Virus record (IMG/VR): IMGVR_UViG_3300017528_000567
Span: 1-64,000 of that record
Reading direction: 5' to 3' (one strand)
Length of the DNA stretch: 64,000 bases
This document shows positions 4,609 to 17,291 of the stretch, one piece after another. The stretch's first letter is position 1; every line of letters begins with the position of its first letter. The notes under the pieces were generated by a model that saw only the letters and a program-made list of their open reading frames with translations, searched no databases and was not told the origin of the DNA. The translations under genes were made by a program, and so were the position numbers.

Positions 4609-4636
4609 ACCGTGTCCCTCAATGTACGCTGCAATG

Positions 4637-4852
4637 CTAGTCAACGAGAGATTCGCCAACCTCAAGAATGTCGTAGCCGGTGGACTCGATTGCGGCACTC
4701 ATTGCGGCATCTACCGCCGCATCCTCCGAGCTCGCCAGTGCGACGCACCGAAACCTGGAGGGAAGATCCACCGCATGGATGGGACCGGCCTGGTCGCAGG
4801 TGGAGTCGCCCCAAGTGATATTGCGGAGAGTGACGGTATAACGCCGCGGCAT
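4637..4852 (-). CDS. hypothetical protein
   Basis: 71-aa ORF MPRRYTVTLRNITW; ATG sits 9 nt after a class-I promoter motif. Confidence 0.7.
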   Translation of the reverse strand: MPRRYTVTLRNITWGDSTCDQAGPIHAVDLPSRFRCVALASSEDAAVDAAMSAAIESTGYDILEVGESLVD

Positions 4853-4887
4853 GTCCTGAAGACAATCGACACGGGGCAAACTTCAAG
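4853..4887 (-). promoter_or_regulatory. class-I promoter-like motif
   Basis: CTTGAAG-N13-GATTGT-N9-ATG. Confidence 0.8.
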
Positions 4888-5029
4888 GGCACCAGCTGGT
4901 CGTCGAGCTGGCGGAATGGACCCAGCTTACGGGCTCGTCGCAAACCGTTTATGACACATCATGTGAAACGGGTTACGATGTGTGCACGAACGGCACTCCA
5001 ACAATCCTGTGGTAGAAATAGACAGACCC

Positions 5030-5725
5030 ATGACCTACGACTTTCGACGTGAGGCGTCGGACGCCAAGAAGGCACTCAAGGATCTCTACCTGTGGCTCCG
5101 CGGCAAGTACGATCAAGGGTATGGCAACCGTATGAGCCCTCAGCTTGAGGCCGGCCTGCGTGCGTTGGGTGTCGAGCCTGGTGATGAGCTGCCACGGCGT
5201 CCGTCCGGCGCGGTGCCACGTGCTCTGTACGATCTGGTAGTGATGGCTGGAGAGCACCACGTGTATGAGTCCGATCGCGAAGTGCTTCTTGAAGCTGCCA
5301 ACAAGGCGCTCGGCGGCAACGGCCACGAGCTACCGGGGGAAGCAGCGCCAAAGTCCTCATTCACTCGCAACAGCAAGTGTCCGAAATGCGGCAATCCCGG
5401 TCCTCACGAGGACAACGGGAAGAAGGGCCGCGATCAGGTGTTCTACTGCGACGAATGTGGCAAGGCGTTCGGCGGCACCATGATGAACCTGTCAGCTGCC
5501 GGTCGACCGGTCGCGACTTCCGATGGGGAGATCATGTTGGACCTGTACGATTTGACTGGTGACCATGAGCCGGTGTCGCTCGCTCAGTTCATTGCAGACA
5601 ACAGTGCCCCAGATGTGGCACCGCTGGACCTCCAAGACATTGCTGCGTTGCGTCGGCTCCGCGTCGGACAGCACGTTTACCTCGGGATTGGCGGCGGTGG
5701 CGTCAAGATCAAGCGCATCGGGTGA
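5030..5725 (+). CDS. hypothetical protein with zinc ribbon
   Basis: CPKCG...FYCDECGK; starts MTYDFR, similar to the 1039 gene. Confidence 0.7.
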   Translation: MTYDFRREASDAKKALKDLYLWLRGKYDQGYGNRMSPQLEAGLRALGVEPGDELPRRPSGAVPRALYDLVVMAGEHHVYESDREVLLEAANKALGGNGHELPGEAAPKSSFTRNSKCPKCGNPGPHEDNGKKGRDQVFYCDECGKAFGGTMMNLSAAGRPVATSDGEIMLDLYDLTGDHEPVSLAQFIADNSAPDVAPLDLQDIAALRRLRVGQHVYLGIGGGGVKIKRIG

Positions 5726-5866
5726 CCTGATTTCCCAGAAAGCTCGCAGAGGCTGGTCGGGATGGACTGCCTCGTGAATGACGCACTTGGTGTAGCCGTA
5801 GGCATGAGCCTCGCCTACACCAGACCTTGACATTCTTCCTGTCTTGGAAGTATCGAGAGTTATACA

Positions 5867-6079
5867 ATGTACAATTCTCGAGCTAGTACGACCAAGCCGC
5901 TCCTTATCGAGGAAAACGTCCCGCCGAGACGCAAGCCAATCGACTGGGAGGTCTTGACTGCGGATGAGCTCGGCGACCTCGCGCGTCACGGCAAGGATAG
6001 TTCGACCAAGAACACCGCCCTCATGCATCTAGTCAAGCGAGCGAGCATCGTCGATCCGCACGTCCGCAAAACGGCCTAG
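5867..6079 (+). CDS. hypothetical protein
   Basis: 70-aa ORF; TTGACA at 5827 upstream. Confidence 0.45.
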   Translation: MYNSRASTTKPLLIEENVPPRRKPIDWEVLTADELGDLARHGKDSSTKNTALMHLVKRASIVDPHVRKTA

Positions 6080-6104
6080 AGCATGCGCGGAGCTCAGTGC
6101 TTGC

Positions 6105-6139
6105 CTTGAAGTTCGACCGTTGTCGATTGTCTCTCACGG
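6105..6139 (+). promoter_or_regulatory. class-I promoter-like motif
   Basis: CTTGAAG-N13-GATTGT-N9-GTG. Confidence 0.8.
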
Positions 6140-6586
6140 GTGAGCAAGAGCTTGAAGAATCTCAGGGGGCTTCTGCCAGGTGGCTATGTTCGGGGAGAGA
6201 GGCTTAGCCTGGACCGTCTTGGCGACGCCCTGGCCGACGCAATCAACAGGATTGATCGGAGAGCCCGCTGTGTGGCTGAAGACGCCGGCCTGCCGGACCC
6301 CGCGCCGCGCTTCGGGCAAATCCTAGCCGACCTGCATGCGCTCTTGACTGGCGGTACGACCGGGGCGCGCAAGGCGGAAGTAGCAGCCGATCTCCTACAT
6401 GGAGAAGTTACGGGGACCACCCTAACCATCGGCAGCGTCACGCATGACATTGACTGGGTCGTGATGCGTGAAGTGACTGACCCGACAATCATCGTCGAGG
6501 ACGGCACGGTCATCTACCTGCGGAGCTGGGCCGACCACAGGGCCGCGCTGCTCAAGCTCGGCGCTGACCACGTCCCCGGGAGATAG
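6140..6586 (+). CDS. hypothetical protein
   Basis: 148-aa ORF; GTG start 9 nt after a class-I promoter motif. Confidence 0.7.
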   Translation: MSKSLKNLRGLLPGGYVRGERLSLDRLGDALADAINRIDRRARCVAEDAGLPDPAPRFGQILADLHALLTGGTTGARKAEVAADLLHGEVTGTTLTIGSVTHDIDWVVMREVTDPTIIVEDGTVIYLRSWADHRAALLKLGADHVPGR

Positions 6587-6595
6587 TCACCGGCT

Positions 6596-6619
6596 GGTGC
6601 CCGGATAGGCAGGGACTGG
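6596..6619 (+). repeat. half copy of the AATGGA-loop palindrome
   Basis: GGTGC-CCGGATAGGCAGGGACTGG; 3' arm missing. Confidence 0.6.
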
Positions 6620-6679
6620 CGGCTCGTTCGCGAGCGCTGCCTAGCCTAGAATCCTGGAGAAGTCCTACCTGAGAGCAGG

Positions 6680-7072
6680 CTAGGTGCTCAACGTTTTGTA
6701 GATGGTTGACCAGAAATCTGCGACATCGTTGTCGTCGAGGTGGTGCTGGAGCTTGCCTGTGGGCGCAGTGTCCATGATGCGCTCAGACGTTCTACGCGAT
6801 TTGGGAATGCGTGACGCCACCACGGCAATGATCCGCGCCACCACTACAGGTGCACCCGGCACCTGCTCTCCCGCTCCGCGGCAAGCCTTCCGAAACTTCC
6901 GCAACTTCTGCGCGAAGCTCTTCTCATGAAGTTGGGTCTCCAGCGTGAGCCCATTCTTGTGAGCCAGGCGCTGTAGGCAGAACATGCTAAACGCATTTGC
7001 GAGGCTGGACTCTAGTTCGTTTTCCAGCGCGTTCTGTGCTTCTGGCAGTGGCTTCGCAAGTGCAACCCTCAT
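6680..7072 (-). CDS. hypothetical protein, paralogous to the upstream ORF (LDDxDxAxFW motif)
   Basis: In frame with 7076..7510 across one TAG; C-terminus KLQHHLDDNDVADFWS. Confidence 0.6.
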   Translation of the reverse strand: MRVALAKPLPEAQNALENELESSLANAFSMFCLQRLAHKNGLTLETQLHEKSFAQKLRKFRKACRGAGEQVPGAPVVVARIIAVVASRIPKSRRTSERIMDTAPTGKLQHHLDDNDVADFWSTIYKTLST

Positions 7073-7075
7073 GAC

Positions 7076-7510
7076 CTACGGGATAGCACGTTCAGCGGCC
7101 ATGGTCTCATCGACGCGCGTCCAGAAACCTGCGGTGTCTTGGTCGTCCAACGTCACACGTAACTTGTTGATATCCGGGACCTTTTTAATGAACTCGCTGA
7201 CTGCCTTGCGACGAATTCGCTCATCCGCGCTCTTCACATCGGCAATTGTCTCCTGGACGGCCTTACCTCGATCGCTGAATCCTTGGATGGCGTGCTCCAT
7301 CGCGTTAGAGAACGCTGTCAACAGTTTTTTGACCTCGGTGTCCCATGCCGGAACCGAAGCCATGTACCCAGTCTTCCGACCTAGGCAAGCCTTGTAATAC
7401 TCCCGTAGTCCGCCTTTCAGGTGCTTGGCCAGGCCCGCTTTGTAAAGCACCCGATTGTGCGCCATCGCGAATAGGAATCGCCTCGTGATGCGCGTCGCCA
7501 AATCGTCCAT
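7076..7510 (-). CDS. hypothetical protein (N-terminal RITRRFL motif)
   Basis: 144-aa ORF; C-terminus KLRVTLDDQDTAGFWT. Confidence 0.7.
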   Translation of the reverse strand: MDDLATRITRRFLFAMAHNRVLYKAGLAKHLKGGLREYYKACLGRKTGYMASVPAWDTEVKKLLTAFSNAMEHAIQGFSDRGKAVQETIADVKSADERIRRKAVSEFIKKVPDINKLRVTLDDQDTAGFWTRVDETMAAERAIP

Positions 7511-7555
7511 GTATTGCTCGCCGCCAATTCTCGTGTCGGTGCTAGTCTCTCACTG

Positions 7556-7654
7556 TCAGCCTCGCAGCAGGGCACTGGTGCCTTGTGCCGCTGTTCCAAG
7601 TGTTCTGAGCTGCAGCTCGAGCTCCAGTTCACTCGTATTGGCGATCTTGCGCAT
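7556..7654 (-). pseudogene. truncated MRKIAN-module ORF (32 aa)
   Basis: MRKIANTSELELELQL then diverges and stops; keeps the full conserved upstream element. Confidence 0.6.
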
Positions 7655-7675
7655 GGGTCTGGGCGATCCTTTCGA

Positions 7676-7701
7676 GAGGCTCGGACTTGTGCGCCGTGCC
7701 C
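7676..7701 (-). promoter_or_regulatory. conserved 5'-leader hairpin of an MRKIAN gene
   Basis: GGGCACGGC-GCACAA-GTCCGAGCCTC. Confidence 0.7.
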
Positions 7702-7768
7702 TTGTTACAGAGCTCGAACCACAAGTGCTTTACTGCGCAGAAACAACGACGCTAGCGTTGCCCCCAGC

Positions 7769-7775
7769 GGTGTAA
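7769..7775 (+). promoter_or_regulatory. class-II motif GGTGTAA
   Basis: 8 nt before ATG 7784. Confidence 0.7.
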
Positions 7776-7783
7776 CAACCCAC

Positions 7784-8260
7784 ATGGATGACATTCGGCC
7801 GCTCGGGTCCGTAGAAGTTAGATGCGCTTACCCAGGATGCAACTGGAGCTTCTGGGTAGATTGCCTGGACCCAAGGCTGCCCGTCGGGCCGTTTGATTGC
7901 GGGGCCGACCACCAAACGCAAGCGCGAGTCAACGCTGCCCTAGAGAAGCTAGACAATGCCGGCCTGGTCTATCAAACAGCCGCGGGACCTGGCTGTGGTT
8001 GCGGAGGGCCGACCCAAAAATCCGGGTGCGAGCCGCCTCCCGCGCAACCCCCTACGATGACGACCGGGTATCTGATGCTACGGCTGCGCGAACCGGACTT
8101 TGATGGGAGTCAAGAGATGTGGGCCGCGGGTCGATTTGCGTGGGCGACTTGGGCCTCTCTCGGCGATCTTGAGGCGCTTCCGTGCGACGCCGGGGCCTAT
8201 CATTGGATGCCCCTTGATGAGGCGAGTCGTAACCGCCCAGCGGGTTACACAGGCCCTTGA
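7784..8260 (+). CDS. Cys-rich hypothetical protein
   Basis: ATG 8 nt after GGTGTAA; CAYPGC, DC, CGCGG motifs. Confidence 0.7.
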   Translation: MDDIRPLGSVEVRCAYPGCNWSFWVDCLDPRLPVGPFDCGADHQTQARVNAALEKLDNAGLVYQTAAGPGCGCGGPTQKSGCEPPPAQPPTMTTGYLMLRLREPDFDGSQEMWAAGRFAWATWASLGDLEALPCDAGAYHWMPLDEASRNRPAGYTGP

Positions 8261-8293
8261 GCCAAGAAAGCTCTTATCTGCTGCGCTCTGTGA

Positions 8294-8316
8294 AGGCACG
8301 GCTGAGGTCCGGCCTC
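8294..8316 (+). promoter_or_regulatory. conserved 5'-leader hairpin of an MRKIAN gene
   Basis: AGGCACGGC-TGAG-GTCCGGCCTC. Confidence 0.7.
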
Positions 8317-8337
8317 AACCCAAGGGAGCCTTGACCG

Positions 8338-8883
8338 ATGCGTAAGATCGCCAACACCCACGAGCTACAGGACGAGCTGCGGAAGCTCATCGCTTACACA
8401 GGGAGCAATAGGCCCTCTAGAGAACGCATTGCTCTAGAACTGAAGACCCTTTCAACTCGGCTCGCTTCTAGTGGAGGCCCGCTCCTGGACGCCAAGGTCG
8501 AGTGGGCGGTGGAGCTCGGTGAGCTCATGAAAGCACGATTCAGCGGCGTCGGCGGCTGGCGAGACCACCACATCAACATCGACATGCACCGCACAAACTC
8601 TGGATGCACTGTCAATCTAGAGAGCCCCCTTGGATGGACTAGCAACATCTATATCGAGATGGGCGAAGGCGAGCAGGCAGTCCATGTCTATTTCAATGTG
8701 TCAGAGCCCAAGGATACGCCCACGGGTGCAGACGGATTGCCCGACCTCGACGCCATTGACCTGACCGACCTGATCGGGAAACAGAAACGCGAAAGCTTCC
8801 CTATCAAGGACCGCGAGCCTATGGCCAAGGCGATGATGGCCGTGTCACTGTGGATCTCGAAGCAGATTCAAAGCGGCCGTTGA
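8338..8883 (+). CDS. MRKIAN-module protein 2
   Basis: MRKIANTHELQDELRKLIAYTGSNRPSRERIALELKTLSTRLA. Confidence 0.85.
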   Translation: MRKIANTHELQDELRKLIAYTGSNRPSRERIALELKTLSTRLASSGGPLLDAKVEWAVELGELMKARFSGVGGWRDHHINIDMHRTNSGCTVNLESPLGWTSNIYIEMGEGEQAVHVYFNVSEPKDTPTGADGLPDLDAIDLTDLIGKQKRESFPIKDREPMAKAMMAVSLWISKQIQSGR

Positions 8884-8905
8884 CGTCGCTCTGCAGCGCG
8901 ACGCT

Positions 8906-8940
8906 AACCGGATAGGCAGGGAATGGACCCTGCTTATCCG
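8906..8940 (+). repeat. AATGGA-loop palindrome, copy 2
   Basis: AACCGGATAGGCAGGG-AATGGA-CCCTGCTTATCCG. Confidence 0.9.
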
Positions 8941-8946
8941 TCTGTA

Positions 8947-9294
8947 TCAGTTGCCTGTGTCTGCTGTGATCAACCAGATCAATTTTCCGAAGACATCGTC
9001 CAGTTCGGTGACAACAGTTGCGAATTTCCGCACGGCAATTTTTGTGTCAGCGCTGAGTCCGCGACTCCCCATCAGTCCGCGGGCGACCTTCTTCACTTGT
9101 TCTATTGGCCCTTCAATACTGGCGACCAAGCGTCCCTCGTCAGTCAGCTCAGCCGTATGCTCGCCGGCAACGCGGGCACGGAGAGACTCGAGCTCGCTGG
9201 CGAGCCGAGAACGGGATGGTTTATCGGTCTGAGCATAGGCAAGCAGGCGGCGCAGCTCGATCTCAAGTTCATCGGCATCGGCAATCTTACGCAT
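8947..9294 (-). CDS. MRKIAN-module protein 3
   Basis: MRKIADADELEIELRRLLAYAQTDKPSRSRLASELESLRARVA. Confidence 0.8.
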   Translation of the reverse strand: MRKIADADELEIELRRLLAYAQTDKPSRSRLASELESLRARVAGEHTAELTDEGRLVASIEGPIEQVKKVARGLMGSRGLSADTKIAVRKFATVVTELDDVFGKLIWLITADTGN

Positions 9295-9317
9295 TGGTCT
9301 GGCACCTTTCTAGAGTG

Positions 9318-9342
9318 GAGGCCGGACCTCAACGCCGTGCCT
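9318..9342 (-). promoter_or_regulatory. conserved 5'-leader hairpin of an MRKIAN gene
   Basis: AGGCACGGC-GTTGAG-GTCCGGCCTC. Confidence 0.7.
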
Positions 9343-9394
9343 TCAAAAGGCGCGCTCGATAAGTGGTTGCTCGACGGCCTGCCTATCCAAGATG

Positions 9395-9577
9395 TCATCG
9401 CTTGCGCTTCTTCGCTTGCGGCGTAGGCGCAAGCGACTCCATCCGTTCGGCACGCTCCACCAAAGCCTCTGCCACTGCGTCAGGTGGTAACCCGGTCAAT
9501 TCACCGAGCATCGCGAAATATGCCCCGTCAGGGAGGTCGTCGTCGACAATGAGTAGGGCCGTCGCGATGTCCATCAT
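9395..9577 (-). CDS. small hypothetical protein (DDDLPDGAYFAM)
   Basis: 60 aa; ATG 9 nt after GGTGTAG. Confidence 0.7.
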   Translation of the reverse strand: MMDIATALLIVDDDLPDGAYFAMLGELTGLPPDAVAEALVERAERMESLAPTPQAKKRKR

Positions 9578-9586
9578 GGGAAGGCT

Positions 9587-9593
9587 CTACACC
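9587..9593 (-). promoter_or_regulatory. class-II motif GGTGTAG
   Basis: 9 nt before ATG 9577. Confidence 0.7.
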
Positions 9594-9772
9594 GACACGC
9601 AGCCAGGCGTAAAGCCCAGGGGCTCAAGGTCAGCTGCCGATTCGCCACGTGGGCGCGACGCGGCTCATTCGCCGCGGGTTTTGGCCTCCTTTGCGAACGG
9701 CTTGAAGTTTCGCTCTGGCCAAGACGTATTTGCAGGAACCGCCTGATATCAGGAACGAGAGGGTCAGACGTC

Positions 9773-11311
9773 GTGACCAAGAAGAAGCCGCCGAACCCCA
9801 ACCCGCAAAAGGCAGAGCTAGACGGATTGGTTTTCATCCTCCGAAATGGGAGATACGAGGTGGAGTTGCCCCACCCGTTCCGACCAGGTAGACATTGGCA
9901 CACCCAGAAGTTCGAGACTCGAGCCAGCGATTTGCAGGAAGCCCGGCGTATCGCTGGTGTCCGTTGCCAAGCTGACGTCGAGCTCGCCGCGCTCGTCGAT
10001 GATGAGGAGGCCAGCCGCCGTCTGGAAGTGCGGGACAAGGTAATCGGCGCCCTGCTCCGCCATTCCTACGGGAGCCTGCCAGCAGTCGAATCTATTCGTT
10101 CTAAAGTGGTCGAGAAGTGGCTGCGGACCATCGAGTCGTTTTCGATCGACCCCTTCACGGCAGTCCAGACCGTTCCGATCGTATTCCCGCCAGATGTGCC
10201 AGGCTCGTGGAAGCCGCCACGTCCGCTCGCATACTGGATGTCCCGCAAGGGTGCCCAAAGCATGCAAGCGCAGGAGACGTACCTCCACACTCAGCGGAGG
10301 ACGACATACAGCAGCGACGTGTTGGACTTCAGTAGCGTGTTGGCCACGTGCGATGAGGAAACCGGCTGGGGTTACGGTGCGAAACTCAAGGGCGTGTCGG
10401 AGACGGTCCATCTACTGGCCCGAGCCCGCAAGAGTCGTGAACTACTAGCGCGCGTCTTCCTACGTGCCTCCCTCCACAACACGATCGTGCGCTTTCGCCT
10501 CTCTGAGGATCCAAACGCCCCCCAACGTCGTCTAGACAACCGGCGGTATCCTGAGACTCCCTACCATGTCGAGTCGGACGACGGTGAGCTTGTCCTGGCC
10601 CTCGCCGGCCTTTGTGGCGAAGACCCGTGGCATCATGCGAGCAAGCAAACATTGCCCGACGTGATGGTTTCGCACGGCGAAAACTACCTTACCAGTTTCC
10701 GGTCCAACGATCATCGCCTTGACAACAGCCGGCAGCGCGAGATTACGGTCCGCAGCCTCAGCGAGCTGGTTGAACTGCTCGCAGTTGAGCACGCCCGGGT
10801 GATTGCCCAGCACGTTGTGGTCCTCTTCGTGGACGAGCAGAACCCAGACCCAGACCTGGAACTCTCCCCATACGGACACGAGGAAAGGCGGCCAGTCCTC
10901 CCGCCTCGTGAACCGCCTTCACGGGATGAGCGCCTACTAGAGATCAAGGCAGACCTGTTCGACGAGCTGAAGAAGTCACCCGCCCTGCAGGCGCAAGCTC
11001 GGAAGCGGATGAAGGATCGCCCCAAGCCGCAACCGCCGAAAGCTGACCCGACGCCCCCAGCCGAGCCGCCCAGCGGTAGCCCTCAAGAGGATCACGAGCT
11101 CCGTGCGGTCGATGCGACCGCGCAAGCAGTCACCGCCTCGGTTGAACCCCCTGCCGAGCTCAAAGCCACCCCGGCCTCAGTTCAAGCGCCCCGTCAGCCG
11201 CGTCGCCACGCTTCGGTCGAGAAGGTGCAGCCCATGGCCAAGACGTACAGCTATCTCGAGAAGCTCAAGGCCCGGAAGCGCAAGCGAACTAACCCACAGG
11301 AGACGACATGA
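9773..11311 (+). CDS. large hypothetical protein, possible N-terminal Arm/AP2-like DNA-binding fold
   Basis: 512 aa; GTG start with GAGAGGG upstream; Pro/Lys-rich C-terminal tail. Confidence 0.75.
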   Translation: MTKKKPPNPNPQKAELDGLVFILRNGRYEVELPHPFRPGRHWHTQKFETRASDLQEARRIAGVRCQADVELAALVDDEEASRRLEVRDKVIGALLRHSYGSLPAVESIRSKVVEKWLRTIESFSIDPFTAVQTVPIVFPPDVPGSWKPPRPLAYWMSRKGAQSMQAQETYLHTQRRTTYSSDVLDFSSVLATCDEETGWGYGAKLKGVSETVHLLARARKSRELLARVFLRASLHNTIVRFRLSEDPNAPQRRLDNRRYPETPYHVESDDGELVLALAGLCGEDPWHHASKQTLPDVMVSHGENYLTSFRSNDHRLDNSRQREITVRSLSELVELLAVEHARVIAQHVVVLFVDEQNPDPDLELSPYGHEERRPVLPPREPPSRDERLLEIKADLFDELKKSPALQAQARKRMKDRPKPQPPKADPTPPAEPPSGSPQEDHELRAVDATAQAVTASVEPPAELKATPASVQAPRQPRRHASVEKVQPMAKTYSYLEKLKARKRKRTNPQETT

Positions 11312-11386
11312 GTCACCCCGGAGCTCGCATGAGGGGGTGCCCCTCTTGGGATCATCTCGTGTTTCCCTAGACATGCAATTGGCAGG

Positions 11387-11448
11387 TAACCGGATAGGCA
11401 TGGAATGGACCTTGCCTATCCGGTTAGCACCCCCTGAAAGTCTGGAAA
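11387..11448 (+). repeat. AATGGA-loop palindrome, copy 3, plus left inverted-repeat arm
   Basis: TAACCGGATAGGCATGG-AATGGA-CCTTGCCTATCCGGTTA-GCACCCCCTGAAAGTCTGGAAA. Confidence 0.9.
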
Positions 11449-11554
11449 GTCTGTACGGGCGCGACGTGGCCTTGGCTGTGCACGCGGAGTCGCCTACCTA
11501 CGATGAGCTGTACAGCGGGAGTTGGGTGCATGCCGCGTAGTGCCCCCAGATTAG

Positions 11555-11589
11555 CTTGAAGTTTCGGGCCGCTCGTTTGTATCTACGGC
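11555..11589 (+). promoter_or_regulatory. class-I promoter-like motif
   Basis: CTTGAAG-N13-GTTTGT-N9-ATG. Confidence 0.75.
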
Positions 11590-13200
11590 ATGGGCAAGCG
11601 AAAGTATAGGACACGGGAAGAGTGGCATGCGGACTTGCGGCAGGTGTGCGCCAGCAAGAACTGGGAGATAGTTGGCAATCTCCCGGACGCGGCGAAGCAA
11701 AAGTTGACCCTGCGCTGCAAAAACCACGAGAAAGGTGTCGATGCGCCGGAGGGCTACTACGAATGGCATCCGGTGCCGGGGGATATCTTTCAGGGTAAAG
11801 GGTGCCGCCTCTGTTCTGGTGTCGCTCCATTGACGAACGCCCAAGTCGCGTTCTCGGCTAGCCAGGTAGGATTGACACTGTTTCCCCAGTCTCAGCGAGT
11901 GACGAACAATAGGGCTTCCCTCCAGTTTCAGTGCAATGAGTGCAGCGACGTTCGACGGTATATCGTATGTAACGTTCGTAACGGGCAAGGCTGCAAACCG
12001 TGCGCTGATAAGAGGAACGGTCTGTCCCGTCGAATCCCAAGAGCTACGATAGTTGCCCGGCTTGCTGTTCACCGACTCAAGTTCGTCAGCGTGGCGCATC
12101 CCGATGGTGATGATGCGCACGTCACCTATACATGTCGGTTCGGCCACATTCATACACAGGTGCTGCACACACTAAAGAAGAGCAAAGGGTGCGCGATTTG
12201 TAGCGTCTTGCCGCGCCGCGAGACGGTACTGAGACAGATTCTCGAATACCTCACGGGGTTCAAGTGGCCGAAGCAGAGAGTCGCCTGGTTGCTAAGCCCG
12301 AAGCGCCGCAAGCTAGAGCTTGACGGCTACTGTAAGGAGGTTGGGTGCGCTTTCGAGCACCAAGGGGAACAACACTACAAATTTGTGGCTCTCTGGAGCA
12401 AATGCCAAAACTACGACCAGTTGAAAGTCGCGGGCTGTCGCGCCGAGGGGGTCAAACTCCTAGTTACTGATGAGAAAGGCTACGATAAAGCCGAGAAGAT
12501 GGGCGGGACGGCGGGCCTCGTGCGTTGGGTAGCTCGGCTACTTGCGGATTTGAACGTACCGATGCGACCAAACCCAGGCCAGTTTAGACTCGAATTCAAC
12601 AGTACAACGGCGGAAGCGCGCACGAGAGAATGTCATGAGTTTGCCAAAGCCAATGACGGCAAGTTCTTGGACCCGGTATGCATCGCAGCCTTAGCAATGA
12701 ATCGCTGGCTCTGTGCGACTCACGGGAAGTTCGAGAGAAGCTTGACCGACATGAAGACAAACAAGAGCTGGTGCCCGAAATGCGGCCGTGAGCTATCTGG
12801 TGAAGCTAGACGCAAACCATTTGTGACACTCTCCGGCTTTCGTAAAGAGTGCAGGCGCATAGGCGTTCGGAGCAGAGACACGTATACGCAGGCTAAGAAG
12901 TCTGGGGCGTTCCAGGTCTTGGCACCGGTAGACGTGATAGATTACTACAAGCTCCCACTGAGCAAGCTATTCCAAAAATCCAGCATGCATGGCGACCCTT
13001 GGCAGTACACGGATGAGCACGACGATCCCGCCGACCTGAAGGACCACCCGAATGCGAAGATTCGGCGCCTCTCGTCGGGGAGGCTCCGTCGTGCCGTGGC
13101 CCTGCCCAAGAAGCAGCCCAAGGTCCCTGCCAACGACAACGTTGATGCACTGGCCGACCGCTTGAACGCTATCTACAGCGGGCGCGAGATCCCCGACTGA
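11590..13200 (+). CDS. multi-zinc-ribbon PD-(D/E)XK/Vsr-like endonuclease (putative homing-type), copy 1
   Basis: Multiple CxxC pairs; LELDGYCKEVGCAFEHQGEQHY nuclease-like motif. Confidence 0.75.
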   Translation: MGKRKYRTREEWHADLRQVCASKNWEIVGNLPDAAKQKLTLRCKNHEKGVDAPEGYYEWHPVPGDIFQGKGCRLCSGVAPLTNAQVAFSASQVGLTLFPQSQRVTNNRASLQFQCNECSDVRRYIVCNVRNGQGCKPCADKRNGLSRRIPRATIVARLAVHRLKFVSVAHPDGDDAHVTYTCRFGHIHTQVLHTLKKSKGCAICSVLPRRETVLRQILEYLTGFKWPKQRVAWLLSPKRRKLELDGYCKEVGCAFEHQGEQHYKFVALWSKCQNYDQLKVAGCRAEGVKLLVTDEKGYDKAEKMGGTAGLVRWVARLLADLNVPMRPNPGQFRLEFNSTTAEARTRECHEFAKANDGKFLDPVCIAALAMNRWLCATHGKFERSLTDMKTNKSWCPKCGRELSGEARRKPFVTLSGFRKECRRIGVRSRDTYTQAKKSGAFQVLAPVDVIDYYKLPLSKLFQKSSMHGDPWQYTDEHDDPADLKDHPNAKIRRLSSGRLRRAVALPKKQPKVPANDNVDALADRLNAIYSGREIPD

Positions 13201-13212
13201 GGCAGCGTATCC

Positions 13213-13247
13213 CTTGAAGTTTGGCCCCCGCCGATTGTCTTTACGGT
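13213..13247 (+). promoter_or_regulatory. class-I promoter-like motif
   Basis: CTTGAAG-N13-GATTGT-N9-ATG. Confidence 0.8.
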
Positions 13248-13451
13248 ATGACCCAAGTAGCCCTCAAGACGACGCCCACCCTGGAGTTTGTGCTCAAGGT
13301 CGACGGCGAGTACGCCATCGGGATCGAGGCGGCAAGCATCGAGGACGCTCAAGCCTTGGCACTGGCCGATGAGTGGCTGGAGCAGCGCTCTGCGCGCCTC
13401 GTAGAGGTCGGCAACGACAACAACCAGCTCGACTTCGTGGTGGGGCGATGA
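13248..13451 (+). CDS. small hypothetical protein
   Basis: 67 aa; ATG 9 nt after a class-I promoter; ATGA overlap with the next gene. Confidence 0.7.
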   Translation: MTQVALKTTPTLEFVLKVDGEYAIGIEAASIEDAQALALADEWLEQRSARLVEVGNDNNQLDFVVGR

Positions 13452-15013
13452 GTCACGGAAGGACAATCGAAGAATGGCAAGAGGATGTGCGGAAGATCCT
13501 CAAGAAGAACAACTGCAAGCTAGTCAGCGCGCTGCCATCCAGAATCGATCACGAATTGACGGCGCGTTGCTGCAACCACGAGGAAGGGCCGGACGCGCCA
13601 CTCGGTTATTACGAGTGGCCCACGACGCCAGCCCGGCTGTTCAAGGGCAAAGGCTGTCCGCTCTGCAGTAAACGTGCGCCACTGACGCGGGCACGAATAC
13701 TGGCGTCGGCTAGTCAGGTACACTTGACTCTAGATCCCGTGTCCCAGGATATTCCCGACGGTATCTCCAACACGAACTACCTCGACTTCAGGTGTGACAA
13801 CTGCGGCGTGACTAAACCGCACAGAATAGGAAATATCCGCACCGGCCACGGCTGCAAGAACTGCGCATCCGTTACCATTGGCGAGGCCCGTCGAATCACA
13901 GATGAAGAACTGATTGATTGGCTTGCGTGCGACGACCTCACGCTGATAAGCCGGGAATTTCGCAAGGGGATCGCCTATGTCAAGTTCGGCTGCCGACGCG
14001 GGCACACGCCTACGCAGCCCTGGGGTGTCGTGAGCCGCGGCAATGGCTGCCCGGATTGCGCGATGATGCCGCACGGTGAGACGGTGACGCGACAGCTCTT
14101 CGAGTACCTCACCGGCTTCACGTGGACGAAGGACAGGGTCAGTTGGATGCGGAGCGACTTGGGCAATCCGCTAGAGCTTGACGGATACAATGAGGAGCGT
14201 CGGTGCGGTTTCGAGTTCCAAGGGGAGCAGCATGATGTAGACAACGGCTATTTCCCACGCGCCAAGTACGACCACCTAAAGGTCGAGGGGTGCCGCAAGC
14301 AAGGCGTCACGCTAGTCATCGTGCTCAAGAAAGACTATGACGCGGCGAAGAAGAGTGGTGGCCAAGAAGGGTTATTGCTGTGGGCAATCGGCCTACTCAA
14401 GGCGGCTGGCATACCAATGCTGGCAAACCCAGGCCGGCTGGTGCTCAAACTCAATACGCCCCGAAGTGACGCACTGACCATCGAAGCCAATGCGCTCGCC
14501 GAAGCCAAGGGCGGTGAGTTCGTGGATGATGTCTGCACCGAGGCTGAAGCCGAGCACAACTGGCGCTGCAAGGATCACGGGACGTTCAAGAGAAGCCTGA
14601 GTGTGATGAAGCAACGGGAGTTCTTCTGTCCGTACTGCGGTGGAGAGCAACGCGCTGAAAACCGACGGTTGGAGTATGCGACCATCTCCGTGATCCGCAG
14701 GGAATTTCGCCGGCTAGGTCTTCAGAATGAACGTGAAGTTGCGAAGGCTCGGGACGCAGGAGATTTCGGTGAGATTGTGGTGCCATCGGCCTTGCAGATC
14801 TACCTCGACCTTACGCCCAACCAGGTGTTCCAAAAAACCACCAAGCTGGGCGAGCCCTGGCAATATATCGACGAGCACGATAACCCCGCCGATCTCGCAC
14901 TCCACCCGAGGCGTTACAGCACCCCGATCCACTTGGGGAAGGGCCGAGAAGCCAAGAAGCCGAACAAGCGGTCGCCGGGCGCGGTCTCAAGGCCTGAGCC
15001 GACGGTAGGCTAG
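13448..15013 (+). CDS. multi-zinc-ribbon PD-(D/E)XK/Vsr-like endonuclease, copy 2
   Basis: Colinear paralogue of 11590..13200; LELDGYNEERRCGFEFQGEQHD. Confidence 0.75.
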   Translation: MSHGRTIEEWQEDVRKILKKNNCKLVSALPSRIDHELTARCCNHEEGPDAPLGYYEWPTTPARLFKGKGCPLCSKRAPLTRARILASASQVHLTLDPVSQDIPDGISNTNYLDFRCDNCGVTKPHRIGNIRTGHGCKNCASVTIGEARRITDEELIDWLACDDLTLISREFRKGIAYVKFGCRRGHTPTQPWGVVSRGNGCPDCAMMPHGETVTRQLFEYLTGFTWTKDRVSWMRSDLGNPLELDGYNEERRCGFEFQGEQHDVDNGYFPRAKYDHLKVEGCRKQGVTLVIVLKKDYDAAKKSGGQEGLLLWAIGLLKAAGIPMLANPGRLVLKLNTPRSDALTIEANALAEAKGGEFVDDVCTEAEAEHNWRCKDHGTFKRSLSVMKQREFFCPYCGGEQRAENRRLEYATISVIRREFRRLGLQNEREVAKARDAGDFGEIVVPSALQIYLDLTPNQVFQKTTKLGEPWQYIDEHDNPADLALHPRRYSTPIHLGKGREAKKPNKRSPGAVSRPEPTVG

Positions 15014-15052
15014 TAGGCGGGGCGTATCGATGCGCTAAAGTCTCGGCTAATT

Positions 15053-15059
15053 GGTGTAC
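15053..15059 (+). promoter_or_regulatory. class-II motif GGTGTAC
   Basis: 9 nt before ATG 15069. Confidence 0.65.
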
Positions 15060-15068
15060 TTACTAGGC

Positions 15069-15296
15069 ATGCAATTGACCGAACCAGAGACCGAAATTCT
15101 GCAGGCGTTCGCTGGGAAACCGTACGCTATCGCAGGCTTCCCCGAGGATTGTAAGGGTCCTATCGATGGCCTGATGGCCTACGGCTTGATCACCTGGAGT
15201 GGTCTCCAGAGACCGATCCCAGGCCAGGACGAGTCTTGGTGGCGTGTTCGCCTGACAGACCAGGGGCGTCGCTACGTTTTGGACGCGGGTTGGTAA
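15069..15296 (+). CDS. small hypothetical protein (winged-helix-like)
   Basis: 75 aa; LTEPETEIL...LMAYGLI...VRLTDQGR; ATG 9 nt after GGTGTAC. Confidence 0.65.
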   Translation: MQLTEPETEILQAFAGKPYAIAGFPEDCKGPIDGLMAYGLITWSGLQRPIPGQDESWWRVRLTDQGRRYVLDAGW

Positions 15297-15312
15297 GCGA
15301 GTAGAGGCAATT

Positions 15313-15355
15313 GGAAAAAGGCGGGGCGTGCGGTGTCGCCGTCCCGCCTTTTTCC
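15313..15355. terminator. intrinsic terminator (bidirectional-looking)
   Basis: GGAAAAAGGCGGG / CCCGCCTTTTTCC 13-bp stem with A/T tracts at both ends. Confidence 0.8.
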
Positions 15356-15413
15356 ATACTTTCAGGGGGTGCAAACCGGATAGGCATGGAATGGACCATG
15401 CCTATCACGCCGG
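15351..15413 (+). repeat. right inverted-repeat arm plus AATGGA-loop palindrome, copy 4
   Basis: TTTCCATACTTTCAGGGGGTGC-A-AACCGGATAGGCATGG-AATGGA-CCATGCCTATC. Confidence 0.9.
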
Positions 15414-15447
15414 ATACCGCAGAGCTCGCTCAAGGGGTCTGGCCGCT

Positions 15448-15454
15448 GGTGTAT
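15448..15454 (+). promoter_or_regulatory. class-II motif GGTGTAT
   Basis: 8 nt before ATG 15463. Confidence 0.7.
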
Positions 15455-15462
15455 GATCCGGC

Positions 15463-16116
15463 ATGCTCTACACCCAATTAGAAACCGACTTGGCCTTGGG
15501 GACGTTGGACGGAATCGTACGCCCAGAATCCCTAGAAAACGTACGTCAACACTACGAGGGGGATGGTCGCTATTATCACGACTTCGATCACGCGGTCGAG
15601 GTCGTGAGCTGGATCAACCGGGCTTGTGAGGACTATACAGAAGAAGCCCTCCACCCGTTCACGCATCAAGAGCTCCGCCTCGCGGCGCTCTTCCATGATG
15701 TGGTCTACACAGCCGCGGGGAGCCCTAGCAACGAACAGCAGAGCTGCGAGCTCATGCGCAACGAGTTGAAGGGGGTAGTTTCCGAGGATTCGTTGGCCCA
15801 GATTGGCCAGCTCATCATGCTCACCGCGCAGCACGGCAAACTTGGCGCCGGTGACGCGCCACTGGCAGGCTGCGTCCTTCTCGACGCCGACATCGCGAGC
15901 CTTGGGCAATATCACTGGGAAACGGTCGTGTACAACAACATGAATGTGGTCGCCGAGCTGCGTCTCAAGTACACGCCCGAGCAAGTGGCGCTGGGACGCA
16001 AAGCTTTCCTTGGTGGCTTGCTAGCAAAAAAGTCGATCTTCCTGTCGGAGTTCTTCCGAACCAGGCTCGAAGATCAGGCCCGCAGAAACATCACGAAGAT
16101 CTTGGCGAGCTCGTAG
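15463..16116 (+). CDS. HD-superfamily metal-dependent phosphohydrolase (COG4339-like)
   Basis: RYYHDFDH...ALFHDVVY...NEQQS...LLDADIASLG. Confidence 0.85.
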   Translation: MLYTQLETDLALGTLDGIVRPESLENVRQHYEGDGRYYHDFDHAVEVVSWINRACEDYTEEALHPFTHQELRLAALFHDVVYTAAGSPSNEQQSCELMRNELKGVVSEDSLAQIGQLIMLTAQHGKLGAGDAPLAGCVLLDADIASLGQYHWETVVYNNMNVVAELRLKYTPEQVALGRKAFLGGLLAKKSIFLSEFFRTRLEDQARRNITKILASS

Positions 16117-16141: not shown

Positions 16142-17239
16142 GTGAATTTCGATTGGAATCAATACACGGGGCAACTCAAGTGGCTCCCGGAGCGGACCAT
16201 CTATCTGACGCGGCACGGGTCGCACGCTTACGGCACCTCTTTGCCAACAAGCGACCTGGACCTCCGGGGGATCACCGTCGCTCCGATTCACTATTACCTC
16301 GGGATCAGCGAGACGTTCGAGCAGGCGGTACAAAACGAGCCGGTAGACCTCACTATTTTCGACCTACGAAAGTTCGTCAAGCTCGCGGCCGACGCCAATC
16401 CCAACGCCCTCGAGATCCTTTTCACCGACCCGAGCGACCATCTCGTGGTGCACCCGGTGATGCAGGTTCTGCTCGAAAATCGCGATGCGTTCCTTAGCCA
16501 GAAAGCCAAGCACACCTTCAGCGGTTACGCGAGGGCGCAGCTGCGCCGGATACAAGGCCACCACAGATGGCTGAAGTCCCCGCCAAAGGCGGCGCCAACG
16601 CGGCAGGAGTTTGGGCTCCCTGAACGCACCGTGATCCCCGCCGATCAACTCGCGGCAGCTCAAGCCGCTGTTACCAAGCAAGTCGATCAGTGGAGCTGGC
16701 ATGAGATGGAGCACCTGGACCCCGCCACACGGCAGGCGGTCCAGGACGAGTTCTTGCGCCGCCTTACCGAGATCACCCAGTGGAGCTGGGATCAAGTGGA
16801 CGCCAAGGTTTGGCTAGCCGCGAGTCGCGCGATCGGGCTCGATGATAATTTCATCCGGCTGCTAGACCTCGAGCGCCAGTACACAGGCCGTCTGAAGGAG
16901 TGGCAGCAGTACCAGGACTGGAAAAAGAACCGGAACCCGGCCCGCGCCGCCCTCGAAGAGAAGTACGGGTACGACTCGAAACACGCCATGCATCTGGTTC
17001 GGCTAACCAAGATGTGCCGGGAGCTCTTGACCGAAGGAGTGGTCCGGGTGCGTCGCCCCGATGCCGGGGAGCTACTCGAGATTCGCAATGGCGGTTGGAC
17101 ATACGAGCAACTACTGGAATACTCCGACCTCCAGGACGCCGCGCTCGGCGAGCTCGTGAAGGCTTCCACGCTCCCCAAGCAGCCTGACCGAAAGAAGCTC
17201 GACGAACTGTGCCTGACCATCATAGAGCGAATGGGGTAG
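16142..17239 (+). CDS. Pol-beta superfamily nucleotidyltransferase (RlaP/Nuc-transf-like)
   Basis: HGSHAYGTSLPTSDLDLRGI (GS..DxD); ANPNALEILF; GYDSKHAMHLVRL. Confidence 0.85.
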   Translation: MNFDWNQYTGQLKWLPERTIYLTRHGSHAYGTSLPTSDLDLRGITVAPIHYYLGISETFEQAVQNEPVDLTIFDLRKFVKLAADANPNALEILFTDPSDHLVVHPVMQVLLENRDAFLSQKAKHTFSGYARAQLRRIQGHHRWLKSPPKAAPTRQEFGLPERTVIPADQLAAAQAAVTKQVDQWSWHEMEHLDPATRQAVQDEFLRRLTEITQWSWDQVDAKVWLAASRAIGLDDNFIRLLDLERQYTGRLKEWQQYQDWKKNRNPARAALEEKYGYDSKHAMHLVRLTKMCRELLTEGVVRVRRPDAGELLEIRNGGWTYEQLLEYSDLQDAALGELVKASTLPKQPDRKKLDELCLTIIERMG

Positions 17240-17291
17240 ACGAGCCCAGAGAAACAGCGATCGCAACGCTGATCTCTGGGCTGGCCGATCC

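What the first reader, a model, noticed from the sequence alone, without database searches (positions are those of the whole stretch)
6596..15413. Dispersed palindrome family with invariant AATGGA loop and compensatory stem changes
Seen: copies at 6596 (half), 8906, 11387 and 15374, all in the same orientation and each 9-80 nt after the stop of a + strand gene. The stem covaries at one pair (G-C at 8906, T-A at 15374, T/T at 11387), one G-T wobble occurs, and the loop AATGGA is constant in the three full copies. There is no U-tract, so it does not look like an ordinary intrinsic terminator. Copies split the accessory region into 2.3-, 2.5- and 4.0-kb modules. Inference: a structure-selected site, either an attC/REP-like recombination signal delimiting gene cassettes or an RNA processing/stability hairpin read by a protein.
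Basis: partly seen in the sequence, partly recalled or inferred. Interest (0 to 1): 0.72.

Follow-up and report, generated by a model that had tools for sequence, protein, structure and literature searches.

The report
Palindromes bounding swappable phage gene cassettes
A 34-40 bp palindrome repeated at one spot in a very large soil phage genome marks the joints between gene cassettes that differ completely between close relatives, so it most likely acts as a DNA recombination joint and not as an RNA hairpin or terminator.

Summary
Three full copies (8905, 11387, 15373) and one half copy (6598) exist in one orientation, against none in shuffles. A further right-arm remnant lies at 4913.

The family is not dispersed. 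A covariance model finds it nowhere else in the 255-kb record. It forms a single array in a variable locus upstream of an HD-phosphohydrolase gene.

Relatives decide the case. A 98-99% identical phage (G001) replaces window 9575-15445 with 1.2 kb holding two different one-gene cassettes, each bounded by the same palindrome. A phage whose backbone is 76-84% identical (L149) has four copies bounding three more cassette sets, including ParDE. Metagenome contigs show two further joints.

Left and right half-sites recombine in many pairings. Copies sit between convergent, tandem and divergent genes. A canonical T-tract terminator lies 17 nt before copy 3.

The centre is AAYGRA, not invariant, and is flipped in L149.

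No integrase, resolvase or transposase was found. The phage encodes a RecA/UvsX-like protein.

Best reading: a PeSL-like cassette-junction recombination site. A lox-like site-specific system remains possible.

The parts
4898..4937 (+). Degenerate site: the centre GGAATGGACC plus a right-arm remnant. The left arm is unrelated. It sits between divergent gene starts (- gene at 4852, + gene at 4982).
   Evidence: 16/17 match to 8920-8936 (D5). Its fold is no better than shuffles.
6587..6645 (+). Degenerate site: a left long arm and left inner arm (TCACCGGCTGGTGCCCGGATAGGCAGGG), then a 22-nt expanded centre, then a right-arm remnant CTGCCTAGCC.
   Evidence: D1, I9; fold z-score -0.4.
8900..8949 (+). 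Site c1: inner palindrome TAACCGGATAGGCAGGG-AATGGA-CCCTGCTTATCCG. It lies between convergent ORFs (8338-8883 on + and 8947-9294 on -) and is identical in G001.
   Evidence: hairpin -26.8 kcal/mol, z -4.3.
8950..11377 (.). Cassette between c1 and c2. It holds a - strand MRKIA-family paralog (8947-9294), a small - strand ORF, and from about 9575 a G000-specific 1.8-kb segment with a 512-aa ORFan (9773-11311, +).
   Evidence: G001, X2 and X4 skip 9571-11378 with 76 other letters in between. The ORFan has no homologs.
11378..11448 (+). Site c2. The left flank ATTGGCAGG is shared with G001 site B and L149 site S4. The inner palindrome has a T/T mismatch. The right long arm is TTAGCACCCCCTGAAAGTCTGGAAA.
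   Evidence: (I1). An X3 contig shares only 11409-11447 and then diverges.
11449..15350 (+). Cassette between c2 and c3, absent from G001 and L149. It holds two paralogous DUF4379/DUF723-type homing-endonuclease-like genes (11590-13200 and 13448-15013, 42% identical), small ORFs (13248-13451, 15069-15296), and a canonical terminator.
15312..15356 (+). Canonical intrinsic terminator (A-tract, G+C stem, T-tract), 17 nt upstream of site c3.
   Evidence: Fold -37.1 kcal/mol, z -8.1.
15351..15445 (+). Site c3. The left long arm is the reverse complement of c2's right long arm. The inner palindrome carries the T-A pair. The right arm has an ACG bulge and a diverged right long arm. Near-identity to G001 resumes only after about 15445.
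   Evidence: I1 (56 nt, 84%).
15463..16116 (+). HD-superfamily phosphohydrolase gene, the conserved backbone anchor on the right of the array.
   Evidence: phrog_19425; homologs and synteny.
4938..6586 (+). Putative oldest cassette, between the 4913 and 6596 remnants. It holds three + strand ORFs (4982-5725, 5867-6079, 6140-6586).
   Evidence: It begins with a right arm and ends with a left arm, like the other cassettes (inference).
6646..8899 (.). Cassette between the 6596 remnant and c1. ORFs are 6680-7072 (-), 7076-7510 (-), 7514-8260 (+) and 8338-8883 (+, MRKIA family).
   Evidence: no family hits.

Best explanation
The palindrome is a DNA-level junction site of a cassette array. The array lies in the hyperplastic (variable) locus of a huge soil phage of about 434 kb, between the topoisomerase-IB and HD-phosphohydrolase backbone genes.

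Anatomy. Each site has two sequence-conserved inverted arms of 14-17 bp (CCGGATAGGCAGGG) around an asymmetric 6-bp centre (AAYGRA). Less conserved outer arms extend it up to about 40 bp per side. Self-contained cassettes of 0.5-4 kb lie between the sites. Their genes are ORFans, a ParDE toxin-antitoxin pair and homing-endonuclease-like genes, in either orientation, and at least some have their own promoters or terminator.

Proposed mechanism. Crossovers inside the shared inner palindrome, between sites of co-infecting relatives or of one genome, insert, delete and swap cassettes and reassort left and right half-sites. I consider recombination by the phage's own RecA/UvsX-type machinery most likely, possibly started by breaks at the extruded cruciform. 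This is the way PeSL motifs shuffle ORFans in T4-type phages.

Shown: the array, its confinement to one locus, cassette replacement bounded by the sites, half-site reassortment, sequence rather than structure conservation, and independence from transcription direction.

Inferred: the crossover mechanism, any circular intermediates, and whether the palindrome also has a regulatory role.
For: 1. Cassette replacement. G001 is 98-99% identical to window 1-9575 and 15445 onward. The segment between is replaced by 1.2 kb with sites B, C and D spaced 590 nt apart, each interval holding a different single ORF.
2. A second lineage. L149 (HD protein 86% identical, backbone 76-84% nt) has four sites upstream of HD. 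They bound three other cassette sets, including ParD/ParE.
3. Further joints in metagenomes. Logan contigs reproduce the G001 form in two other runs (X2, X4). X1 has a new left flank at 15374, and X3 has a new cassette after 11447. One contig ends inside site B.
4. Half-site reassortment. The outer-arm types I labelled alpha, beta, gamma and delta occur in many pairings. Alpha pairs with ATTGGCAGG at c2 and with the backbone arm at c3. The backbone arm pairs with beta in G001 site D and with ATTGGCAGG in L149 S4.
5. One-locus distribution. The covariance model finds only these copies in 255 kb plus 175 kb. It finds none in more distant relatives, where TopoIB and HD are neighbours.
6. Sequence conservation. 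Nine of 17 pairs are invariant and covariation is not above chance, although flanking intergenic DNA is diverged.
7. Position relative to genes. Sites lie between convergent, tandem and divergent genes. A canonical terminator directly precedes c3.
8. Centre variants. The centre variant and its orientation are uniform within an array and differ between lineages, which fits concerted evolution by recombination at the sites.
9. Recombination genes. The phage encodes a RecA/UvsX-like protein and an ExoV/Dda-like helicase.
10. Precedent. PeSL-mediated shuffling and mini-circles are documented in PMC2839356 and PMC4122927.
Against: - No crossover was observed directly. All evidence is comparative, from three lineages plus contig fragments.
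- The shared homology is short (34-40 bp, with 14-17 bp per arm), which is marginal for RecA-type recombination.
- G000 and G001 are mosaic elsewhere too, with diverged patches at 1001-1500, 2001-2500 and 16741-17240. The G000/G001 difference could therefore come from crossovers in the backbone rather than in the sites.
- The right break lies at about 15445, at the outer end of the site, not at its centre. The left break at about 9575 is not at a site.
- The strong sequence conservation of the arms, the lox-like anatomy and the uniform orientation would be explained at least as well by a dedicated protein (a recombinase or a regulator).
- About 168 kb of the parent contig could not be searched.
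Confidence: 0.55

Rival explanations
1. A dedicated site-specific recombination system that behaves like an integron but has simple lox/FRT/dif-type core sites. A recombinase dimer binds the two conserved 14-17 bp arms and exchanges strands across the 6-bp asymmetric centre. Directly repeated sites let cassettes leave as circles and re-enter at any site. The recombinase would be unrecognised, encoded in the unsearched 168 kb, or supplied by the host.
For: - The architecture of arms, 6-bp asymmetric spacer and arms matches tyrosine-recombinase core sites such as dif 11-6-11 and loxP 13-8-13 (established knowledge).
- The arms are conserved as sequence, not structure.
- All 6 distinct sites in G000/G001 and all 4 in L149 point the same way regardless of gene orientation.
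- The centre variant is uniform within an array, as overlap identity would require.
- A circular cassette would carry a long palindromic site. G001 site C and L149 site S3 have that form, at -44.7 and -53.5 kcal/mol.
- A TopoIB-domain protein (tyrosine-recombinase fold) of 1192 aa flanks the locus.
Against: - No PF00589, no credible PF00239, and no Y1, rve or DDE transposase were found in G000 or G001.
- The position next to the centre differs between G000 and G001 on the shared-backbone half of c3/D and c2/B. The right homology break is at the outer end of the site, not the centre.
- L149 carries two centre variants in one array.
- TopoIB is a conserved backbone gene that is also present in relatives without sites.
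Confidence: 0.22
2. An operator. The palindrome is the binding site of a dimeric phage regulator that controls the accessory locus, comparable to the conserved inverted repeats bound by actinophage repressors. It coincides with cassette joints only because any conserved intergenic motif attracts recombination.
For: - The arms are sequence-conserved and symmetric, with no covariation.
- The sites are intergenic. c3/D lies 55-58 nt upstream of the HD start and overlaps its likely promoter. G001 site D and the 4913 remnant lie between divergent starts.
- The motif is restricted to one locus.
Against: - No regulator was identified.
- Half-sites of 14-17 bp with outer arms up to 40 bp are much larger than usual operators.
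- c1 lies between convergent gene ends, where no promoter is expected.
- An operator role does not by itself explain the uniform orientation of an asymmetric centre.
- This reading is not exclusive of the best explanation.
Confidence: 0.13
3. An RNA hairpin: a T-tract-less terminator, or a processing or stability signal shared by the accessory operons.
For: - Hairpins are stable on both strands, -23 to -31 kcal/mol with z -3.4 to -5.9.
- In the window each copy follows a + strand ORF.
- Mismatches on the AAYGRA strand are G-T 7 times and A-C 3 times, a weak lean toward wobble pairs.
Against: - Only 3 copies exist in 255 kb, although the genome has hundreds of genes.
- A canonical terminator stands 17 nt before c3.
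- G001 site D and the 4913 remnant lie between divergent starts.
- Flanking genes are transcribed in either direction, so the loop would read AAUGGA or UCCAUU.
- No covariation and no Rfam match.
Confidence: 0.07
4. Cassettes are non-autonomous transposons with terminal inverted repeats that insert into the palindrome and duplicate the 6-bp centre as a target-site duplication.
For: - The c2-c3 cassette has 56-nt inverted ends, with the same AATGGA outside both (I1).
- The two sites flanking the 472-nt L149 cassette share the private variant AACGAA.
- X3 carries the same 38-nt end on different cargo.
Against: - Any cassette lying between two copies of a palindrome has inverted ends automatically.
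- The ends of one cassette are often of different outer-arm types, for example alpha and beta in the ParDE cassette.
- No transposase of the tested families was found.
- The element ends would have to equal the target arms.
Confidence: 0.03

Closest known systems
PeSL (promoter-early stem-loop) motifs of T4-type phages (Arbiol et al. 2010, PMC2839356; Comeau et al. 2014, PMC4122927)
   Same: - A conserved intergenic stem-loop motif is concentrated in hyperplastic regions.
- It flanks ORFan cassettes that differ between near-identical phages.
- No integrase is present.
- The phage has its own recombination machinery.
- Exchanges map within the motif.
   Different: - There is no attached sigma-70 promoter at fixed distance. 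The promoter-like motif of this locus is separate.
- The palindrome is longer (14-17 bp arms, up to 40) and strongly sequence-conserved, with an asymmetric centre of uniform orientation.
- It forms one array of 3-5 sites rather than dozens across several regions.
- A terminator function is unlikely here.
- Mini-circles were not tested.
dif (pdif) modules of Acinetobacter plasmids (e.g. PMC6449649, PMC13141974)
   Same: - Discrete accessory modules, including toxin-antitoxin pairs, are bounded by short sites built as arm, 6-bp centre, arm.
- They are shuffled between related replicons.
- No recombinase is encoded next to them.
   Different: - pdif sites have distinct XerC and XerD arms resembling the chromosomal dif site, and they alternate in orientation.
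- Here the arms are symmetric, unrelated to dif consensus sequences, and all in direct orientation.
- The replicon is a phage.
Integron attC sites and CALINs (attC clusters lacking an integrase)
   Same: - There is an array of small cassettes separated by imperfect palindromes.
- AAC and GTT triplets sit at the outer ends of the inner stem.
- Cassette content varies between strains.
- TA cassettes occur.
   Different: - The RYYYAAC/GTTRRRY boxes are absent.
- There are no extrahelical bases or unpaired spacer.
- The sequence is conserved, where attC conserves structure.
- Cassette genes run in both orientations with their own signals.
- No IntI was found.
loxP/Cre, FRT/Flp and dif/Xer core sites
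   Same: Two inverted protein-sized arms flank a short asymmetric spacer that gives the site a direction. Direct repeats would give excision and integration.
   Different: No tyrosine recombinase was found. Outer arms extend the symmetry far beyond a simple core site. The centre varies at 3 of 6 positions between arrays.

Membership tests
Integron attC | R'' box RYYYAAC and R' box GTTRRRY at the ends of the hairpin | tested here: not met
   Only the AAC and GTT triplets are present. The 7-mers read CGCTAAC, AGGTAAC, AAGGAAC and GTTAGCA, GTTCCTT, GTTGCTT.
Integron attC | Imperfect stem with extrahelical bases and an unpaired central spacer; structure conserved but not sequence | tested here: not met
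   The stem is a continuous 13-17 bp helix. Nine of 17 pairs are invariant in sequence and covariation is not above shuffles.
Integron attC | IntI tyrosine recombinase (PF00589) with attI next to the array | tested here: not met
   No PF00589 match in G000 (255 kb) or G001 (175 kb). None was called in the 10 kb upstream. About 168 kb of the parent contig was not searchable.
Integron attC | Cassette content of the array varies between related genomes | tested here: met
REP/BIME | Tens to hundreds of copies dispersed in intergenic regions genome-wide | tested here: not met
   There are 3 copies in 255 kb, all within 6.5 kb.
REP/BIME | Associated RAYT (Y1 transposase, PF01797) | tested here: not met
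   No match in G000 or G001.
Intrinsic (Rho-independent) terminator | G+C-rich hairpin followed by a T-tract, at the 3' end of transcription units | tested here: not met
   No copy has a T-tract. A canonical terminator lies 17 nt before c3. G001 site D lies between divergent starts.
PeSL-type regulatory/recombination cassette motif | Conserved stem-loop motif concentrated in hyperplastic regions, flanking ORFans that are inserted, deleted or replaced between close relatives | tested here: met
PeSL-type regulatory/recombination cassette motif | Composite with a consensus early promoter adjacent to the stem-loop | tested here: not met
   The locus-specific promoter-like motif (CTTGAAGTT...GATTGTCT...ATG) lies 130 nt or more from c2 and is absent next to c1 and c3.
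PeSL-type regulatory/recombination cassette motif | Recombination between motifs yields circles or deletions during infection | not testable with these tools
   Only assembled contigs of soil metagenomes were available.
Tyrosine-recombinase core site (lox/FRT/dif type) | Two inverted binding arms around a 6-8 bp asymmetric overlap region | tested here: met
   Arms of 14-17 bp around the 6-bp centre AAYGRA.
Tyrosine-recombinase core site (lox/FRT/dif type) | A cognate recombinase that binds and cleaves at the arm/overlap borders | tested here: inconclusive
   None was found in the sequence held. The genome is incomplete in hand, the host is unknown, and a TopoIB-domain protein nearby is untested.
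TIR transposon / MITE | Terminal inverted repeats plus target-site duplication, with a transposase in cis or trans | tested here: inconclusive
   The inverted ends and the repeated 6-bp centre exist (I1) but follow automatically from the palindromic sites. No rve, DDE_Tnp_1 or Y1 transposase was found.

The most novel reading that the evidence does not exclude
A huge phage carries an integron-like gene-capture platform of its own kind. It would be an array of directly oriented, lox-like sites (conserved 14-17 bp arms around a 6-bp asymmetric core) at which circular ORFan, toxin-antitoxin and homing-endonuclease cassettes are inserted and excised. The recombinase would not be recognisable by current family models. 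It could be the long TopoIB-domain fusion protein that flanks the locus, or a host enzyme.
Probability: 0.2. Interest if true: 0.85.

Novelty: new variant of a known kind. Interest (0 to 1): 0.62.

Why it matters
How huge phages acquire and turn over their large load of ORFans is poorly understood. This locus offers a compact case that can be tested: a defined 34-40 bp motif marks every joint of a cassette array that has turned over completely between phages 98-99% identical elsewhere.

If exchange happens at the motif, it explains local hyperplasticity. It also gives a handle for finding cassette cargo such as anti-defence genes, toxin-antitoxin pairs and selfish endonucleases in metagenomes.

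If a dedicated enzyme reads the site, this would be a new phage-borne gene-capture system and a possible source of a new site-specific recombination tool.

Tried and rejected
Collection scans
- Exact-pattern scans of IMG/VR, metagenome and GTDB genome collections returned, besides G001, one 1.7-kb contig identical to the window and about 130 chance hits.
- A search for close relatives of the HD gene in IMG/VR found only G001.

Candidate enzymes
- The weak Resolvase hit (15.6 bits) lies in a large ORF at G000 about 68 kb. That ORF has no Pfam match on a whole-protein scan, so I rejected it.
- The 512-aa ORFan next to c2 gave a weak Atlas lead to integrase arm-binding domains (score 0.81-0.85). 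It has no homologs among 5.8 billion proteins, and its AlphaFold model has pLDDT 38.5 and is unusable. It stays unresolved.
- PDB sequence searches of three local proteins were uninformative.
- NCBIfam, Pfam, PHROG and PADLOC scans of cassette ORFs found nothing except the endonuclease-like pair and ParDE.

The homing-endonuclease-like genes
- Their nearest homolog (P0002, in L145/L146) sits in another phage-like context without the palindrome. The endonuclease is therefore cargo, not the array's enzyme.

Ideas dropped
- I first thought the outer arms covary within each cassette. L149 shows mixed arm types on a single cassette, so I dropped this.
- Strand-specific G-T versus A-C bias is 7 to 3, which is not significant.

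Limits reached
- The parent metagenome contig cannot be searched as a genome.
- Look-ups of cassette proteins gave no new contexts.
- There are no Rfam matches.

Full report
CONTEXT

The window is the first 64 kb of an IMG/VR 'provirus' record of 255,478 bp. That record is the 3' part of a 433,843-bp soil-metagenome contig, Ga0187305_1079523.

The 10 kb upstream of window position 1 is also phage-like. It holds a D12 methyltransferase, RNase HII and a 1192-aa protein with a C-terminal topoisomerase-IB domain. The provirus boundary therefore looks artificial.

The record encodes DNA polymerase A, a DnaB-like helicase, a ClpX-like ATPase, a large terminase, a head protease, GroEL, an ExoV/Dda-like helicase and a RecA/UvsX-like protein. 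This is a huge phage with G+C of about 59%.

THE OBSERVATION

The palindrome is present as described at 8905-8940, 11387-11424 and 15373-15408, with a left half at 6598-6614. All copies are on the + strand. Shuffled sequence gives no matches.

Two corrections matter. First, the family is not dispersed. Pattern scans and a covariance model built from ten sites find only these copies in the 255-kb record and only four in the 175-kb relative. Second, there are two degenerate members:
- The 6596 copy keeps the left arm, has a 22-nt expanded centre and retains a right-arm remnant.
- 4913-4929 keeps the centre and right arm, matching copy 1 at 16 of 17 positions.

RELATIVES

G001 (IMGVR_UViG_3300046461_000454) is 98-99% identical to window 1-9575 and from about 15445 onward. 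The 5.8 kb between is replaced by 1.2 kb.

That 1.2 kb holds three sites (B, C, D) spaced 590 nt apart, each interval carrying one small ORF on the opposite strand. Site A equals copy 1 and site D occupies the place of copy 3.

Logan contigs laid on 9480-15479 gave four results:
- The G001 arrangement appears in two further runs.
- Run X1 has a third left flank at 15374.
- Run X3 has a contig that shares only 11409-11447 (right arm plus outer arm of copy 2) and then runs into unrelated sequence.
- A 10.7-kb contig ends inside site B.

A more distant relative, L149/L150, has an HD protein 86% identical and a backbone 76-84% identical in nucleotides. It carries four sites in the 3.6 kb upstream of the HD gene. 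They bound three further cassette sets: a 79-aa ORF with ParE/ParD, an 80-aa ORF, and four small ORFs.

Relatives at 63-73% HD identity have no site. In two of them (L151, L152) the topoisomerase-IB gene sits beside or one gene away from the HD gene. The array therefore lies in a lineage-specific hyperplastic locus of about 25 kb between two backbone genes.

ANATOMY OF THE SITE

I oriented the ten distinct sites by their centre. The inner arms (consensus TAACCGGATAGGCAGGG / CCCTGCCTATCCGGTTA) are almost invariant. The centre reads AATGGA five times, GATGGA once, AACGGA twice and AACGAA twice.

Outer arms reach about 40 nt from the centre. I labelled four recurring types by their core sequence:
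- alpha: GCACCCCCTGAA
- beta: CCTTCCCCCTG
- gamma: ACCTGCCAAT
- delta: the backbone-linked arm ATCACGCCGGATAC

These types combine freely across the centre. Alpha pairs with gamma at copy 2, with delta at copy 3 and with another arm at L149 S1. Delta pairs with beta at G001 D and with gamma at L149 S4.

This reassortment of half-sites is the most direct sign that exchanges occur inside the shared inner palindrome.

The 56-nt inverted repeat that brackets the endonuclease cassette (I1) follows from this. A cassette begins with the right half of one palindrome and ends with the left half of the next. Where both outer arms are of the same type, the site is a long palindrome. G001 C folds at -44.7 kcal/mol and L149 S3 at -53.5 kcal/mol.

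STRUCTURE VERSUS SEQUENCE

The hairpins are stable on both strands. The covariation test is negative. Cells paired are 86.5%, but every measure is at or below the shuffled mean. Nine of 17 pairs never vary.

It shows G-C five times, G-U twice, U-A once and a mismatch twice.

A second variable pair is never restored to A-T. It reads G-T or A-C in six of ten sites.

The arms are thus conserved as sequence, and more so than the neighbouring intergenic DNA. That points to recognition of duplex DNA by a protein, or to homogenisation by frequent recombination. It does not point to selection for an RNA fold.

WHY NOT A TERMINATOR OR RNA SIGNAL

- There are three copies in a genome for which I called about 225 ORFs.
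- No copy has a T-tract.
- A textbook terminator (-37.1 kcal/mol, A-tract and T-tract) stands 17 nt before copy 3.
- G001 site D and the 4913 remnant lie between divergent gene starts. Copy 1 lies between convergent ends.
- Cassette genes run in either direction while the centre keeps one orientation per array. Transcripts would therefore carry the loop in both senses.
- There is no Rfam match.

ORIENTATION

All six distinct sites of G000/G001 read AATGGA (once GATGGA) on the HD-gene strand. All four of L149 read the reverse complement of AACGRA on that strand.

Yet the asymmetric backbone arm next to HD, and the ATTGGCAGG flank, keep their places. The centre is therefore flipped as a unit between lineages and uniform within each array.

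This fits arrays that grow and are homogenised by recombination at the sites. It would also fit a directional site-specific system.

THE ENZYME

I found none. There is no PF00589, no credible PF00239, and no Y1, rve or DDE_Tnp_1 transposase in either record.

The two 536/521-aa paralogs in the copy 2-copy 3 cassette belong to the DUF4379/DUF723 treble-clef zinc-finger group typical of free-standing phage homing endonucleases. Their nearest homolog sits in a different phage-like context without the palindrome. They are selfish cargo.

The 512-aa ORFan gave only a weak, unverifiable lead. The phage has RecA/UvsX-type recombination functions.

MECHANISM AND WEIGHTS

I take the site to be a cassette-junction recombination site. 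The most likely route (0.55) is recombination within the short shared palindrome by the phage's general machinery, as documented for PeSL motifs in T4-type phages. There, exchanges map within the stem-loop and yield mini-circles without any integrase (PMC2839356).

Caveats:
- The homology is short.
- G000 and G001 are mosaic elsewhere.
- The right break lies at the outer end of the site (about 15445) and the left break (about 9575) is not at a site.

The rivals and their weights:
- A dedicated lox-like site-specific system (0.22) is favoured by the site architecture, the sequence conservation and the uniform orientation. It is disfavoured by the missing enzyme and by the polymorphism pattern next to the centre.
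- An operator role (0.13), which is compatible with the main reading.
- An RNA hairpin (0.07).
- Transposons with terminal inverted repeats and a 6-bp duplication (0.03).

COMPARISON WITH KNOWN SYSTEMS

Functionally the closest are PeSLs, Acinetobacter dif modules and integron/CALIN arrays. The site fails the membership tests for attC, REP and intrinsic terminators. It meets the hyperplastic-region and cassette criteria of PeSLs but lacks their promoter half. It has the anatomy of a tyrosine-recombinase core site without a known recombinase.

I rate it a new variant of a known kind.

Noticed in passing
window 2926-2964 (+), 4850-4889 (-), 6095-6142 (+), 11554-11592 (+), 13212-13250 (+); diverged copy at 9700 (+): A start-associated motif, [CG]CTTGAAGTTT-N9-TCGATTGTCT-N5-7-ATG/GTG, ends exactly at the start codon of five ORFs. 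All five lie within 2.9-13.3 kb of the window. Only one weaker look-alike (247343, - strand) occurs in the other 240 kb. It looks like a locus-specific promoter for leaderless mRNAs, with an ECF-like -35/-10 pattern rather than sigma-70.
   Followed up: partly
window 1086-1523 (-), about 7600-7664 (-), 8338-8883 (+), 8947-9294 (-): A paralogous gene family with a conserved N-terminus (MRKIA[ND]..EL..EL+.L.AY....+PSR.R.A.EL) and a conserved upstream region has at least four copies in the accessory region. Two of them converge on site c1. It has no family hits.
   Followed up: partly
upstream of window position 1 (L148 10743-20702): The IMG/VR 'provirus' boundary at window position 1 looks artificial. 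The parent 434-kb contig continues with phage-type genes. G001's record ends at the same point.
   Followed up: partly
L148 15586-19164 (-); homologs in L151 5852-9811, L157 4419-6488, L152 8110-9129: The topoisomerase-IB catalytic domain sits at the C-terminus (residues 943-1159) of a 1192-aa protein that has a weak N-terminal zinc-peptidase-like region (DUF5700). Relatives have 1319-, 689- and 339-aa versions. In L152 a NUMOD3 endonuclease gene sits between it and the HD gene.
   Followed up: partly
L149 796-1457 (-): A ParE/ParD toxin-antitoxin pair forms one cassette of the array in the 86% relative. This recalls the toxin-antitoxin cassettes of chromosomal integrons and dif modules.
   Followed up: no
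window 1001-1500, 2001-2500, 9001-9575, 16741-17240: These patches are 4-8% diverged between G000 and G001, against a background below 1%. That indicates frequent homologous exchange among co-circulating relatives.
   Followed up: partly
window 11437-11454: A tandem 9-mer, GAAAGTCTG GAAAGTCTG, lies in the right outer arm of site c2. The second unit runs into GTCTGTACGG, which resembles the GTCTTTACGG of the start-associated motif.
   Followed up: no
L145 5189-6936: The nearest homolog of the endonuclease-like gene, with its upstream small ORF, is called in pieces (57 aa, then 311 aa, with an antisense ORF between). It may be frameshifted.
   Followed up: no
L149 position 1, L150 position 1, and a 2.7-kb Logan contig: Three independent assemblies of the L149-type phage all break at the same point, about 470 nt beyond site S1. 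This suggests further population heterogeneity or a repeat there.
   Followed up: no
window 9640-9650 and 11378-11386: The G000-specific 1.8-kb segment with the 512-aa ORFan is bracketed by GCCGATTCGCCA on its left and GCAATTGGCAGG on its right. G001 has a single GCCGATTGGCAG there. This could be a short duplication made when the segment inserted.
   Followed up: no
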